From Octopus bimaculoides (lineage: Eukaryota), in contig NC_068994.1 of NCBI RefSeq assembly GCF_001194135.2, positions 34,285,631 through 34,335,767 on the forward strand: a stretch of DNA of 50,137 nt, read 5' to 3'. Below are positions 4,886 through 40,185 of this stretch, piece by piece; the first letter of the stretch is position 1; every line of letters starts with the position of its first letter. The position numbers were made by a program, and so were the translations under genes. Under the pieces are notes generated by a model. The model saw only the letters and a list, made by a program, of their open reading frames with translations, did no database searches and had not been told where the DNA came from.

Positions 4886-5010
4886 AAGAGAGAGAGAGAA
4901 GGAGAGAGAAAAAGAGAGAGAGAGAAGGTAAGGGAGAGAGATTGAAGAATAAATAGTTACAAAGGGGAAGTGAGTGATAGAGGAGAAAACAAATAGTAAG
5001 AAGTGTGTAC

Positions 5011-5240
5011 CTTGGGTACTGCAGGTAAAGGCTTTGCATAAGATGTAAAACTATTCCTCATTGGTAAATTCCAGTGCTGTGAAGGGATGTTGGGACTGGC
5101 ACTGGTCACCCGGATTGACTTCAAGTCAATGACGTCATTGGATGTTGGGTTCGGGCAGATATTACCTTCGTTTGAACCCTTTGTGGTCGGATTGGTATGT
5201 TTACCTCGGCTGAGTGTATGTAACTGGGAAGACTTATGCC
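5011..5240 (-). CDS. PCDH: Protocadherin cytoplasmic exon 3 (inferred): (G)HKSSQLHTLSRGKH...HWNLPMRNSFTSYAKPLPAVPK; may instead read through to TAA at 4957
   Basis: Long polypyrimidine tract then attgcag| acceptor. The phase-1 start completes GGG (Gly) with exon 2, and the frame is open. Ends at a possible weak donor AAG|GTACAC. GC-richer unique island between purine microsatellites. Confidence 0.75.
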
Positions 5241-5534
5241 CTGCAATCATAAGAAGAATACACCGACATGAGAAGAGAGTAAAAAACAAAAAGAAAAAAA
5301 GAAAAGGAACCAGAAGAAAATAAGAAGGAGCAGGTGGGAGTAGAAAAAAAGGGGAGAGAAGGGGAGAAGGAGAAGAAGGGTTGCTATATATGCTGATATC
5401 GTTTTTAATTTAATTAAGTTTGAGCCAATCAAGATAATTTGAATACAATAGATAAATGCGCATTCATCAGAGAAATATATGCAGACGTGTGCATATGTGT
5501 ATGTATGTATGTATGTGTGTGTATATATATATAT

Positions 5535-5590
<56 letters not shown>

Positions 5591-5977
5591 GAATAAGTGG
5601 AGCAGAAATATACAAGAGGATGAAAAGTGTCGCTGAAGAGGTCACATATGTGTAACGAAAAATTTTCGGACAATGGATATAAGTTAAAATGAGAAAAGTA
5701 ATAAACGAATGAAGAATGAATATATAGTGCATGTGTTTATTTGGCAGAAAAAAAAATGACAATCCCGAAATATAATATATATATATATATACAGGCACAT
5801 TTATGTGTGNNNNNNNNNNNNNNNNNNNNNNNNNNNNNNNNNNNNNNNNNNNNNNNNNNNNNNNNNNNNNNNNNNNNNNNNNNNNNNNNNNNNNNNNNNN
5901 NNNNNNNNNNNNNNNNNNNNNNNNNNNNNNNNNNNNNNNNNNNNNNNNNNNNNNNNNNNNNNNGTGTGTGTGTGTGT

Positions 5978-6013
<36 letters not shown>

Positions 6014-6017
<4 letters not shown>

Positions 6018-36901: not shown

Positions 36902-37062
36902 AAAGCTTATAAGCGATCACTGTGCATTGGCTAAGTTAAATAGTCTAATATTGGGGCATATAAGCCCTCGGCGGGAAAAAATGGCAAACCCTACTTTTTC
37001 TGTCGAGGGCTTATACTAGACTATTTGACTTTGTTAATGGAAGGTGATCGCTTATAAGCTTT
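36902..37062. repeat. Foldback palindrome (MITE-like)
   Basis: Perfect 19-bp outer IR, 14/15-bp middle IR and perfect 12-bp inner IR. Confidence 0.85.
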
Positions 37063-37415
37063 CAGCTTATAAAAAAATTATACGCACACACACAGACACA
37101 CACACCGTCATTTTAGAAATAAATATATCATTACCAAACTGAGACAGAAAAAAGAAAAGCACCAAAAATAATAACGGGCTTCGTGGCGAGTTCCAACTAT
37201 TGATTTTGATGAGGTGAATCGAGACAGATTCTTGATTTGATTTGAATCGGTCTGGTAATGACTCATTTATCATTTGCTCTTTACCGTCTCAAATTCGCGC
37301 AAATATCATTTAAAATCTTAGTAATTAATTCAATATATATATATAACATCTAGAGATTGCCATGAGAAAATAACAAGGAAATGTTTACGAAAACGAGCAT
37401 TATGAATCTTTGTTT

Positions 37416-37606
37416 GGGAATAAAGGTTCTCGAAACACATCACATACAGCTATAAACAACTGCATGTAAATAATGGGTAGAAAAATCCTTTTTCGGTAGA
37501 AAAAAGTCGAAGGTTTCGACTTTTCTATCCAAAAACATTTTTCAATTCAACATTTATATGCTATTTATTATAGCTATATGTGATACGCTTCGAGAACCAT
37601 TATCCC
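37416..37606. repeat. Foldback palindrome with ~90-bp arms and 3-nt loop
   Basis: Arms align at roughly 75-80% by manual count, with a central perfect aaaagtcgaa-ggt-ttcgactttt. Confidence 0.85.
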
Positions 37607-37703
37607 CACCTCACGCACACACTAAAAAAAAAAAATTGAATTATTTCGCTTTTTCTCGAAAGTTTATAAATTTCTTATAATAATTATTATCATTATCACT
37701 TAC

Positions 37704-40103
37704 CTGTGCTGCCACCTGCATGGTATTTGGTAATTGTGTTCCTGGAGGAGGTATTTTCCAGCTTTGTCCAGATTTTTTTACTAACTGAGGATCTTGTCGC
37801 AGTAGTGTACTTTGTGAACTTCTGTTATGCTCCTGTTCCGATACAACAGTCACTGGCACATCATATTGTGGCACCACTTGCCCGCAAATATATTCTGACA
37901 GATTATTTTGACTAAATAGTTTAGAACCATCAACTCCGCTAGTGTATTGATTATTTCTGAGATTGTTTCTTCGAACAATACATACAGTTATTGATATGAC
38001 TACTACCAAAGCTACTATTACTGTTGCTACTAACATAATAATCAGTAAATTGATGTGTATTTTATCATCAGACTGTTTGTGAACTGCAGTAAACATCTTT
38101 GATGTTTTGTTGCTTACTGTAAGGGTTAAAGAAAGGGTGCTGGTTGCTGATAAAACTGGTGCACCGCTGTCTTTGACTACAAACTGGAGGTTATACGATC
38201 CTGCATCGTTTTGATAAACTGGACGGGAGAAAGACAAAACTCCCGTGTAAAGGTTCACAGCAAATAATTGTTTGTCATTTCCTCCAAGTATTTCATATTG
38301 GAGGAAAGCATTGACATGACTGTCTCTATCAGAGGCTCTTAGTGCTGTAATGTCATTCTTACCCTGTGGATGATAATGGACATCTAGATTGAAAGGATCC
38401 ACACTGGGAAATGTAAAATATGGTGCGTTGTCGTTTTTATCAATGACTTCAACCACAACATTTGCTGTGTTGTTCAACGAAGGAGTCCCGTTGTCTTTGA
38501 CTAAAACTTTAAATTTATAAACGTCTTGTTGCTCCCTGTCCAGTGACTGAGTGGTGGAGATGAAACCAAAATTAGATATTTCAAATGGAAGAAGATAGCC
38601 TTGGTTGTTCAACAAAGAATATGTCAGTTCACTGCCAGAATCGAGGTCTGGATCTGTGGCATTTATAAAACCAATGGGAAAATTAGGTTCTTCATTTTCG
38701 AAAATTAAAAATTTAAATGTATCCTTGGTAAACTGTGGATGTACGTCATTGACATCCATTACTTGGATGGAAAAATTCTTAGTTGTTCGCAAAGGAGGAG
38801 TCCCGTTGTCTTGGCATGTAATCGTAAAATGTAAAAAATTATCAATTTCTCGATCAATGTGGCTTTTTATGACAATTTTATATTTCATCTTTCCTAGACT
38901 TTGAAGTTGGAGTTTATCGTGCTCGAGTTCACAAGTCACTTCTCCATTCTGACCAATATCATTGTCTGTAACCTTGACATAAGCAATAAAGCTGTTAACT
39001 TTGACTCCTTCAAAAATAGAGGCGACATCATTGGTAGTAAGAGAAATGAAGTTAATATCTATATCAGGAGCATTGTTTTGTTGGTTGATGACATTAACAA
39101 GTACTATAGCTGTTGAACTGAGTGGTGGTATACCCTCGTCACGAGCCTCAATCAACAGCTTGTAACTTTTCTTAGGTTCTGTGAAGAACTTTTGATGTAA
39201 AAAAAGTTCTCCTGATGTTTTATTCAGCTCAAAATAAGATATGTCCAGAGCTGATGACTTGGTGCTGAAATAATACGATATTCGTCCATTTTTCCCGGAA
39301 TCCAAGTCTTTTGCCGACAGTATAACTACAGGTATATATATCAAGTGGCCGTTGTTTACTGTAATGTTATAGATATTCTGGCTAAAAACTGGTCTGTTAT
39401 CATTAATATCAGCGACTGATATAGAAACATCTAATACGCAGGGCAGCCCACCGTCATTGGCAACCACCTGTACATGATAAGAATCTTTAAGCTCTCTATC
39501 TAGTTTCTCTTCCAAAACGATTCCGAGTTCTGTAGAACCATCGTGTTTCCTAGAAACAGACAATGTAAATGGCTCCGACATTTCCTTTCTCAGCCGATAT
39601 TTCAACTGAGAATTCAAAATGCCAACATCTCTGTCAATGGCATTTGGAATAAATTTCGTCGTACCCTTCATATCACTTTCTGTAAATTCCAAATGAAATT
39701 CTTTGCTCTGAAAGTCTGGTCTGTTATCGTTAACATCTTTTATAATAATTTTAATTTCTAAAATCTTCACAAACGATTCCCTATTTCTCACAGCCACTTC
39801 GACCATCCTGAAACATTCAGTGTTGTATTTACAAAGGGACTCAGCATCTAATATCTGAGCAGTATAAAGTTTCCCACTTTTGGAAATATTAAATAACTTT
39901 GAGCTGCTCTCATTTCCTTTCTGGAGCTGTTGAAACCAAAACAAACTGTGATCCTTCAAAGGAACACCATTCACTAAATGTGTGTCGGCAGCAATATCAC
40001 CAATATAACTCCCGGGGTTCTGACCTTCTTCCACATAATATGTTAAATCTATGCATAAAGATGCCTGCAGCAAAAAGAGAAATGCATAGATTTTTATCAG
40101 CAT
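37704..40103 (-). CDS. PCDH: Protocadherin, large first coding exon (signal peptide, EC1-EC6, TM, proximal cytoplasmic tail; 800 codons)
   Basis: Lies within the 852-aa ORF. The real start is probably MLIKIYAFLFLLQASLC (signal peptide, ATG at 40103). EC linkers DVNDN, DINDN, NQQNN, DVNDV and DKNDN; DxD and DRE motifs; C-X5-C in EC1 (CKYNTEC); hydrophobic TM followed by RR. Perfect donor CAG|GTAAGT at 37704/37703 (phase 0), so the ORF's last ~20 codons are intronic. Confidence 0.95.
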
Positions 40104-40185
40104 GTTCTTATCCGGAAATAATGTCACAAAAACATTGACATAAATTCCAACAAGGACTGTTTTAGATTTCGCATGGATGCCTGAT
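40104..40185 (-). other. 5' UTR part of the large protocadherin exon, implying an upstream non-coding exon
   Basis: Minus strand (TTTA)n-ttgtttactttcag| acceptor at 40186/40185, with a second CAG 5 nt downstream. Confidence 0.7.
40124..40174 (-). other. uORF in protocadherin leader (MRNLKQSLLEFMSMFL*)
   Basis: ATG at 40174, two further in-frame ATGs, and a TGA ending 20 nt before the main ATG. Confidence 0.65.

What the first reader, a model, noticed from the sequence alone, without database searches (positions are those of the whole stretch)
4957..40185. Hidden multi-exon protocadherin: one ectodomain exon plus distant small cytoplasmic exons (variable/constant-like layout)
Seen: a phase-0 donor at 37704, a 130-nt exon with canonical sites (20534-20405, phase 0 to 1), and a phase-1 exon starting at 5240. 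These join in one frame (...QVAAQ|KTPQR...LYEELP-G-HKSSQ...KPLPAVPK) across 17.2-kb and 15.2-kb introns. Exon 2 is absent from the ORF track. Established: vertebrate clustered Pcdh-alpha/gamma splice many ectodomain exons to shared small constant exons, and coleoid protocadherins expanded independently. Inference: no second ectodomain exon lies in between, so this is either a stand-alone gene or the most proximal variable exon of a cluster sharing these tail exons.
Basis: partly seen in the sequence, partly recalled or inferred. Interest (0 to 1): 0.8.

Follow-up and report, generated by a model that had tools for sequence, protein, structure and literature searches.

The report
Annotated octopus protocadherin gene, private tail exons
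The stretch holds most of an ordinary, already annotated Octopus bimaculoides protocadherin gene. Its small cytoplasmic-tail exons are spliced only to its own large ectodomain exon, not shared with neighbouring genes as in vertebrates.

Summary
The exon model is real.

The spliced product is 100% identical to NCBI XP_052829053.1 / XP_014778543.1, "protocadherin beta-2 isoform X1" of Octopus bimaculoides (927 aa). That model has been annotated since 2015, so the gene is not hidden.

- At least one 5' non-coding exon is spliced into the acceptor at 40187-40186.
- A fourth coding exon (DTKTELM, then stop) lies about 11 kb beyond window position 1.
- Exon 2 is a cassette exon. Skipping it shifts the frame and gives the annotated 839-aa isoform, at roughly equal contig depth.

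The assembly gaps do not break the model. A gap-free O. sinensis orthologous locus is collinear and has the same four exons.

The "variable/constant" reading fails:
- Only this gene's ectodomain exon is seen joined to exon 2.
- Paralogues P0005 and P0041 carry their own tail exons with the same intron phases.
- The tail is 36-62% identical to paralogue tails, so it is not constant.
- Published work states that cephalopods do not share final exons.

Verdict: already known and ordinary. The stand-alone gene alternative is correct.

The parts
37704..40185 (-). Large exon. 5'UTR part 40185-40104, CDS 40103-37704 (800 codons). It encodes a signal peptide, six extracellular cadherin repeats, the transmembrane helix and the first 90 cytoplasmic residues. 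It ends in phase 0.
   Evidence: Translation. Pfam finds Cadherin_2 plus five Cadherin stretches. Residues 22-662 align to EC1-6 of solved protocadherins. RNA contigs cover it end to end.
40186..40187 (-). Acceptor AG used by an upstream 5' non-coding exon. That exon is not in the window, nor in the 10 kb upstream of the ATG held in L001.
   Evidence: Loose ends of 305-519 nt behind 40188 in X1, X2 and X7. The loose-end sequence is absent from the window and from L001. Contigs align to 40188 only because the upstream exon ends in CAG (O. vulgaris model P0129).
40053..40103 (-). Start codon and predicted signal peptide (MLIKIYAFLFLLQASLC).
   Evidence: Read from the sequence. It matches the N-terminus of the NCBI model.
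37974..38054 (-). Transmembrane helix, residues 684-710 (INLLIIMLVATVIVALVVVISITVCIV), followed by RRNN.
   Evidence: Read from the sequence.
37702..37703 (-). Donor GT of the large exon.
20535..37701 (-). Rest of intron 1. The intron (20535-37703, donor GT included) is 17,169 nt as assembled and includes 3,324 N in six gaps. The O. sinensis counterpart is 15,699 nt.
20405..20534 (-). Cassette exon, 130 nt, 43 codons plus 1 nt (KTPQR...YEELP), phase 0 to 1. It is skipped in about half of the assembled transcript depth.
   Evidence: RNA contigs in X1, X2, X4, X6 and X7 are flanked only by the end of exon 1 and the start of exon 3. The skip junction is seen.
5241..20404 (-). Intron 2. It is 15,164 nt as assembled, with 1,412 N in six gaps and a 402-bp artefactual duplicate. 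The O. sinensis counterpart is 11,183 nt.
5011..5240 (-). Exon of 230 nt (G-HKSSQ...KPLPAVPK), phase 1 to 0. It carries the family-conserved motif WNLPxRNSFTSYxKPLPAVP.
   Evidence: RNA contigs. Conservation in the tail alignment.
5121..5123 (-). TGA stop used when exon 2 is skipped. The frameshifted tail GISLPSY...MTSLT gives the 839-aa isoform X3.
5009..5010 (-). Donor GT of exon 3. It is spliced to the terminal exon (DTKTELM, stop, 3'UTR) about 16.4 kb downstream, outside the window at L001 61493.
   Evidence: Loose end at 5010 in X1, X2 and X4. Location in L001.
38705..38706 (-). Two adjacent candidate A-to-I RNA editing sites (I467V and a silent change in L466).
   Evidence: RNA contigs read G on the sense strand. 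The assembly and DNA run X18 read A.
38780..38780 (-). Candidate A-to-I editing site (K442E), seen in one RNA run (X7).

Best explanation
The window holds the central 40 kb of a stand-alone, multi-exon protocadherin gene of Octopus bimaculoides. It lies on chromosome record CM046614.1 at about 34.27-34.33 Mb, on the minus strand. NCBI calls the products 'protocadherin beta-2 isoforms X1-X3'.

One 2.48-kb exon encodes the signal peptide, six cadherin repeats, the membrane helix and the juxtamembrane 90 residues. Three small downstream exons of 130 nt, 230 nt and 7 codons encode the rest of the cytoplasmic tail. These exons belong to this gene alone. The layout was copied as a whole, with the same intron phases, each time the gene family expanded by tandem duplication.

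Shown here: the junctions, the single upstream partner of exon 2, the private tail exons of paralogues, and collinearity with the O. sinensis orthologue.

Inferred: the protein is a homophilic neuronal adhesion receptor whose conserved C-terminal motif (WNLPxRNSFTSYxKPLPAVP) couples it to cytoplasmic partners. Splicing within the gene tunes that coupling in three ways. Skipping exon 2 shifts the frame and removes the motif (839 aa). A tandem acceptor cag|tag| at the last exon either adds DTKTELM (927 aa) or stops at once (920 aa). Skipping exons 2 and 3 together stays in frame (807 aa, annotated in O. sinensis).
For: - The spliced product is 100% identical over 927 aa to XP_052829053.1 / XP_014778543.1. 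Isoforms of 920 and 839 aa are also on record.
- Junction contigs appear in nine RNA runs from several studies.
- A 187-nt contig runs unbroken from 30 nt of exon 1 through exon 2 into exon 3, so the assembly graph has no branch at the exon 2 acceptor.
- Paralogues P0005 and P0041 lie about 270 kb and about 1.5 Mb upstream. Each has its own large exon plus two tail exons, with phases 0 and 1.
- The tail is 36-62% identical to O. bimaculoides paralogue tails, against 57-61% for the ectodomain. It is 100% identical only to this gene's own isoforms and to the O. sinensis and O. vulgaris orthologue.
- The gap-free O. sinensis locus has the same four exons in the same order and is collinear throughout. 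The tandem acceptor is conserved there.
- Pfam and solved-structure matches place it among six-repeat protocadherins.
Against: - Logan contigs drop rare variants, so a minor junction from another upstream exon into 20534 would not be seen.
- The only raw-read RNA run sampled (X24, about 6% read) had no reads on the gene.
- The 5' exon(s) could not be placed. The O. vulgaris model spans about 249 kb, so what lies in the first intron of the O. bimaculoides gene is unknown.
- The functional reading of the tail motif and of the isoforms is inference. The exon-2-skipped mRNA has its stop 110 nt before the last junction and could be a decay substrate rather than a protein isoform.
Confidence: 0.94

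Rival explanations
1. Vertebrate-like variable/constant organisation. Exons 2-4 would be constant exons that also receive splices from other protocadherin ectodomain exons further upstream, with this exon as the most proximal variable exon.
For: The layout of a large ectodomain exon plus small distant tail exons looks like Pcdh-alpha/gamma. The 5' leader exon is far upstream. Some annotated octopus models span a neighbouring paralogue, so long-range splicing across units is at least annotated elsewhere.
Against: One upstream partner only at the exon 2 acceptor in five RNA runs, and only exon 1 or exon 2 at the exon 3 acceptor. No retrieved protein with a different ectodomain carries this tail. 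Paralogues have their own tail exons. No second ectodomain exon lies within the locus or in the 10 kb upstream. The literature statement says the opposite.
Confidence: 0.03
2. Scaffolding artefact. The small exons would belong elsewhere and were placed downstream of the large exon by mis-joined contigs across the twelve gaps.
For: Twelve N runs lie in the two introns. A perfect 402-bp duplicate flanks the 10-N gap, which shows local assembly error.
Against: The mRNA joins the exons directly. The gap-free O. sinensis locus has the same exon order, orientation and similar spacing. All alignment blocks of 500 bp or more ascend together, apart from one short 79%-identical inverted block.
Confidence: 0.01
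3. The gene is real, but exon 2 skipping is splicing noise or an unproductive, decay-targeted product rather than a regulated tail-less isoform.
For: Skipping shifts the frame, and the stop lies 110 nt upstream of the last exon junction. The frameshifted 39 residues match nothing known.
Against: Skip and inclusion contigs have similar depth in seven runs from several studies: X1 5.9 vs 9.4, X2 28 vs 28, X4 36.9 vs 44.6, X15 42.8 vs 16.4, X16 34.8 vs 36, X17 17 vs 17, X19 32.1 vs 39. The same isoform is annotated in O. sinensis with an identical frameshifted tail. Exons 2 and 3 are 100% identical at nucleotide level between the two species.
Confidence: 0.35

Closest known systems
Octopus/coleoid expanded protocadherins (168 multi-exonic genes in O. 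bimaculoides; Albertin et al. 2015 as cited in PMC6339937, and PMC9068888)
   Same: It is one of them. It lies on the protocadherin-rich chromosome record and has one large exon for all cadherin repeats, a few small tail exons, and the octopus-specific C-terminal motif. Orthologues exist in O. sinensis, O. vulgaris and Argonauta hians.
   Different: Nothing essential. Unlike the paralogues P0005 and P0041, whose CDS ends in the third coding exon (KLPYA, KVPFS), this gene has an extra terminal exon giving DTKTELM. Argonauta has DTKTELV.
Vertebrate clustered protocadherins (Pcdh-alpha and Pcdh-gamma)
   Same: A six-repeat ectodomain, transmembrane helix and proximal tail are encoded by one large exon, followed by three small cytoplasmic exons. 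The closest solved ectodomains include Pcdh-gammaB4 EC1-6 (6e6b) and Pcdh-alpha7 (5dzv).
   Different: The small exons are not shared. Each octopus gene has its own copy, and the tails are less conserved than the ectodomains.
Vertebrate non-clustered delta-protocadherins (PCDH10, PCDH17, PCDH18, PCDH19)
   Same: A stand-alone gene with a large first coding exon and a few small exons for the cytoplasmic domain, with alternative splicing of the tail. The top solved matches include the delta-type 6vg1, PCDH10 (6vg4) and PCDH18 (6vfr).
   Different: PMC6339937 reports no evidence of the CM1-CM3 cytoplasmic motifs in octopus protocadherins. Here the conserved motif is WNLPxRNSFTSYxKPLPAVP.

Membership tests
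Protocadherin (cadherin superfamily) | N-terminal protocadherin-type EC1 plus further cadherin repeats, six or seven in all | tested here: met
   Pfam finds Cadherin_2 at residues 21-105 and five Cadherin stretches, E = 2e-63. Residues 22-662 align to EC1-6 chains 6vg1 and 6e6b.
Protocadherin (cadherin superfamily) | Single-pass type I membrane protein with a signal peptide and one transmembrane helix | tested here: met
   Hydrophobic N-terminus at residues 1-17, and a 27-residue hydrophobic stretch at 684-710 followed by RRNN. These were read from the sequence; no dedicated predictor was run.
Protocadherin (cadherin superfamily) | No classical-cadherin catenin-binding cytoplasmic domain | tested here: met
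   The Pfam scan of the full 920-aa product at E <= 0.01 returned no cadherin cytoplasmic-domain family.
Protocadherin (cadherin superfamily) | Whole ectodomain encoded by one large exon | tested here: met
   Exon 40185-37704 is uninterrupted and covered by RNA contigs.
Variable/constant clustered protocadherin locus (vertebrate Pcdh-alpha/gamma type) | Several ectodomain exons spliced alternatively to the same downstream constant exons | tested here: not met
   Only this gene's exon 1 is joined to exon 2 in five RNA runs, and a contig runs unbroken across the junction. Rare junctions cannot be excluded with contigs.
Variable/constant clustered protocadherin locus (vertebrate Pcdh-alpha/gamma type) | Identical C-terminal cytoplasmic segment in proteins with different ectodomains | tested here: not met
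   Among 132 retrieved proteins, the tail is 100% identical only in isoforms and orthologues of this gene. O. bimaculoides paralogues are 36-62% identical.
Variable/constant clustered protocadherin locus (vertebrate Pcdh-alpha/gamma type) | Neighbouring ectodomain exons lack tail exons of their own | tested here: not met
   P0005 (L002) and P0041 (L003) each have two private tail exons with phases 0 and 1. Four tandem units in O. sinensis L006 each carry their own copies.
Variable/constant clustered protocadherin locus (vertebrate Pcdh-alpha/gamma type) | A promoter in front of each variable exon, with stochastic promoter choice | not testable with these tools
   Here the large exon is preceded by a spliced 5' leader exon rather than a promoter. 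Promoter use could not be assayed.
Coleoid expanded protocadherin family | Member of the tandem whole-gene array on the protocadherin-rich chromosome, with orthologues in other octopods | tested here: met
   Record CM046614.1 at 34.26-34.34 Mb, with same-strand paralogues at 34.60, 35.86 and 39.58 Mb. Orthologues are listed. Family description in PMC9068888.

The most novel reading that the evidence does not exclude
A minority of transcripts that start at upstream paralogues' ectodomain exons, or at the distant shared-looking 5' leader region, might splice into this gene's exon-2 or exon-3 acceptor. Assembled contigs would not show them because they drop rare variants. This would make the tail exons weakly 'constant' after all. 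It would fit the annotated octopus models that span neighbouring units. A more modest reading is that the roughly 1:1 exon-2 cassette is a conserved switch that removes the family's cytoplasmic motif from half of the protein.
Probability: 0.05. Interest if true: 0.65.

Novelty: already known. Interest (0 to 1): 0.1.

Why it matters
As it stands, this matters little. The finding shows that a reader with no tools reconstructed three exons of a known gene correctly. It adds direct support, from one locus, for the published view that octopus protocadherin diversity comes from whole-gene duplication and not from shared constant exons. The only points of possible follow-up value are within-gene: an abundant frameshifting cassette exon, a conserved tandem acceptor that toggles a 7-residue C-terminus, and candidate recoding edits.

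Tried and rejected
Short stretches around each exon were used instead.
RNA use of the two alternative acceptors there is therefore known only from annotation.
- The raw-read run X24 gave no reads on the gene.
- A search with the 127-aa tail alone returned only 5 short hits and missed even the query's own protein. Tail identities were computed locally instead.
- The 5' leader and the terminal exon were searched for in the window and not found.
- The O. vulgaris locus and the P0021 locus were too long to fetch. P0028 and P0114 are not on record as gene products.
- Rfam found no RNA family in the window.
- I considered a WIRS (WAVE-binding) or class I PDZ reading of the tail motifs. I did not adopt either, because the sequences do not fit those consensus patterns as I recall them.
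- The Albertin 2015 paper (PMC4795812) is not held. Its content is cited only through papers that quote it.
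Full report
**What is in the sequence.** On the minus strand there is one long open reading frame, the only one in the window that is not made of N runs or simple repeats. It starts at the ATG at 40103 and stays open to a donor at 37704|GT, a span of 800 codons. The exon itself begins at 40185, just after an AG at 40187-40186. 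Pfam finds the protocadherin-type first domain (Cadherin_2) and five further cadherin stretches. Residues 22-662 align to solved EC1-6 ectodomains of protocadherins: 6vg1, Pcdh-gammaB4 6e6b and PCDH10 6vg4. A hydrophobic N-terminus (residues 1-17) and a 27-residue helix (684-710) followed by RRNN make it a type I membrane protein.

**RNA evidence.** The organism's public runs hold the exon.
- At the end of the large exon, every RNA run shows two continuations. One is the reverse complement of the start of exon 2. The other is the reverse complement of the start of exon 3.
- Exon 2 is flanked on one side only by the last bases of exon 1, and on the other only by the first bases of exon 3. This holds in X1, X2, X4, X6 and X7.
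- A 187-nt contig runs unbroken from exon 1 through exon 2 into exon 3.
- X18 is a DNA run, because it covers the intron. X15, X16, X17 and X19 are RNA, because their coverage stops at the donor.
- Both predicted junctions are therefore real. In addition, exon 2 is a cassette exon whose skipped form has about the same contig depth as the included form.
- Exon 3 ends at 5011, where a donor is used. Nothing is expressed between 4960 and 5007. The mRNA continues into GACACCAAAACAGAGTTAATGTAA, which reads DTKTELM and then a stop.
- That sequence is not in the window. The 5' leader spliced into the acceptor of the large exon is not in the window either.

**Identity.** The four-exon product is 100% identical over 927 residues to "protocadherin beta-2 isoform X1" of Octopus bimaculoides (XP_052829053.1; XP_014778543.1 in the 2015 annotation; UniProt A0A0L8GRZ6).
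- Isoform X3 (839 aa) is the exon-2-skipped, frameshifted form that I saw in RNA.
- O. sinensis also has an 807-aa form that joins exon 1 directly to the last exon.

The gene sits on CM046614.1 at about 34.27-34.33 Mb. In that record the terminal exon lies 11.4 kb beyond window position 1, behind a 2,150-N gap. Its acceptor is a tandem cag|tag|GAC. The upstream AG puts TAG directly after ...AVPK and gives X2. The downstream AG gives DTKTELM and X1. This tandem acceptor is conserved in O. sinensis.

**The gaps.** Twelve N runs lie in the two introns, not only the six listed by the scan's program. None touches an exon. The mRNA joins the exons directly. The orthologous O. sinensis locus has no N at all. 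It has the same four exons in the same order, with introns of 15.7, 11.2 and 14.8 kb, and is collinear with the O. bimaculoides scaffold across the whole gene. One local assembly error is visible: 6355-6756 and 6767-7168 are 100% identical and flank the 10-N gap exactly. Intron lengths in the window are therefore approximate, but the model does not depend on them.

**Are the tail exons shared?** Four lines of evidence say no.
1. No other upstream exon is joined to exon 2 or exon 3 in the RNA contigs.
2. Among 132 retrieved relatives, the 127-residue tail is identical only in this gene's isoforms and in its O. sinensis and O. vulgaris orthologue. It is 79% identical in Argonauta and 36-62% in O. 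bimaculoides paralogues, whose ectodomains are 57-61% identical. The tail is thus at least as diverged as the ectodomain, not constant.
3. The paralogues P0005 (34.60-34.66 Mb) and P0041 (35.86-35.89 Mb) each have a large exon ending in phase 0, a small exon of 133 or 166 nt ending in phase 1, and a private last exon. The exon layout was therefore duplicated together with each gene.
4. No second ectodomain exon lies in the introns or in the 10 kb either side of the coding range, in either species.

[quoted passage not shown] PMC6339937 quotes "168 multi-exonic PCDH genes".

**How it most likely works.**
- Shown: a six-repeat protocadherin with a 217-residue cytoplasmic domain, of which 90 residues come from the large exon and 127 from three small exons. 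Its transcripts come in at least three tail versions.
- Inferred from the family: homophilic adhesion or recognition between neurons. The invariant C-terminal block (L102, P103, N106-T109, Y111, K113-P116 and P119 of the tail, in the motif WNLPxRNSFTSYxKPLPAVP) would be the docking site for cytoplasmic partners.
- Skipping exon 2 replaces that block with 39 unrelated residues. The stop then lies 110 nt before the last junction, so this mRNA may instead be a decay substrate. I rate that sub-question as open.

**Comparison and verdict.** The gene works like any protocadherin, and its exon layout resembles both vertebrate clustered variable-plus-constant units and stand-alone delta-protocadherin genes. 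It fails the defining tests of a variable/constant locus and meets those of the coleoid expanded family. It is already annotated and already explained, so interest is low.

**Limits.** Contigs hide rare junctions. The 5' leader was not placed; the O. vulgaris model spans about 249 kb. Use of the two terminal acceptors could not be checked in RNA.

Noticed in passing
window 38705, 38706, 38780 (minus-strand codons 467, 466, 442): The only differences between RNA contigs and the genome are T>C on the plus strand, which is A>G on the mRNA. They give I467V, a silent change in L466, and K442E. RNA runs X1, X2, X4, X7, X15 and X17 read G at 38705. The assembly and DNA run X18 read A. The two adjacent sites vary independently between runs. 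This looks like A-to-I recoding, which is reported to be enriched in octopus protocadherins (bioRxiv 10.1101/714394).
   Followed up: partly
window 6355-6756 and 6767-7168, flanking the 10-N gap 6757-6766: A 402-bp stretch is repeated with 100% identity on both sides of the gap. This is most likely two overlapping contig ends that were not merged, so intron 2 is overstated by about 412 bp.
   Followed up: yes
window 23639-36820 (intron 1): Six further assembly gaps, 3,324 N in all, lie inside the finding's span but were not in the scan program's list.
   Followed up: yes
window 20405-20534 and 5011-5240, compared with L004 28100-28229 and 39413-39642: Exons 2 and 3 are 100% identical at nucleotide level (360/360) between O. 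bimaculoides and O. sinensis. The large exon is 97.5% identical and the introns 79-93% in aligned blocks. So synonymous positions are conserved as well, in exactly the alternatively spliced exons.
   Followed up: partly
window 37704 joined to 5240; stop at 5123-5121: The exon-2-skipped, frameshifted transcript has about the same contig depth as the included form in seven RNA runs. The same isoform is annotated in O. sinensis with an identical 39-residue tail.
   Followed up: partly
L001 61484-61515 (outside the window) and L004 54398-54429: A tandem acceptor cag|tag|GAC sits at the terminal exon and is conserved between the two species. One AG gives an immediate TAG stop (920 aa). The other adds DTKTELM (927 aa). 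Argonauta has DTKTELV. The paralogues checked end in KLPYS-type tails within the previous exon.
   Followed up: partly
window 40174-40124 (minus strand): A 16-codon upstream ORF (MRNLKQSLLEFMSMFL) lies in the 5'UTR part of the large exon, out of frame with the main ORF.
   Followed up: no
upstream of window 40185; not in the window or L001: A 5' leader of at least 305-519 nt is spliced to the large exon, and its exon(s) lie more than 10 kb upstream. The O. vulgaris model of the orthologue spans about 249 kb, so the first intron may be very long. Its content is unknown.
   Followed up: partly
window 38262-38341 and 38746-38774: Very short contigs of 31-37 nt, with depth up to 450 against about 9 for the gene, break the RNA assembly here. 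They are probably words shared with many paralogues, for example in the region encoding the conserved RASDRDSHVNAF segment.
   Followed up: no
window 18657-19243; 21200-21386 and 32397-32588: Intron 2 holds about three tandem copies of a ~217-bp unit, 85-91% identical. A dispersed ~190-bp repeat, 86% identical, has one copy in each half of intron 1.
   Followed up: no
O. bimaculoides locus of P0021 (no DNA fetched): The gene model for this 854-aa protocadherin spans 135 kb and overlaps the start of the next protocadherin gene on the same strand. Its last exon therefore lies beyond a neighbour's ectodomain exon. Their C-termini do not look shared, but this was not resolved.
   Followed up: no
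L006 (O. sinensis CM016872.1:59508112-59539799): Four tandem units about 7 kb apart each carry an ectodomain exon and their own copies of two tail exons. The last-exon copies match the protein equally (95%) and the middle-exon copies at 94-98%. Yet the annotated model P0110 runs from the first ectodomain exon to the fourth unit's tail exons. This is either mapping ambiguity between near-identical tail exons or real long-range splicing.
   Followed up: partly
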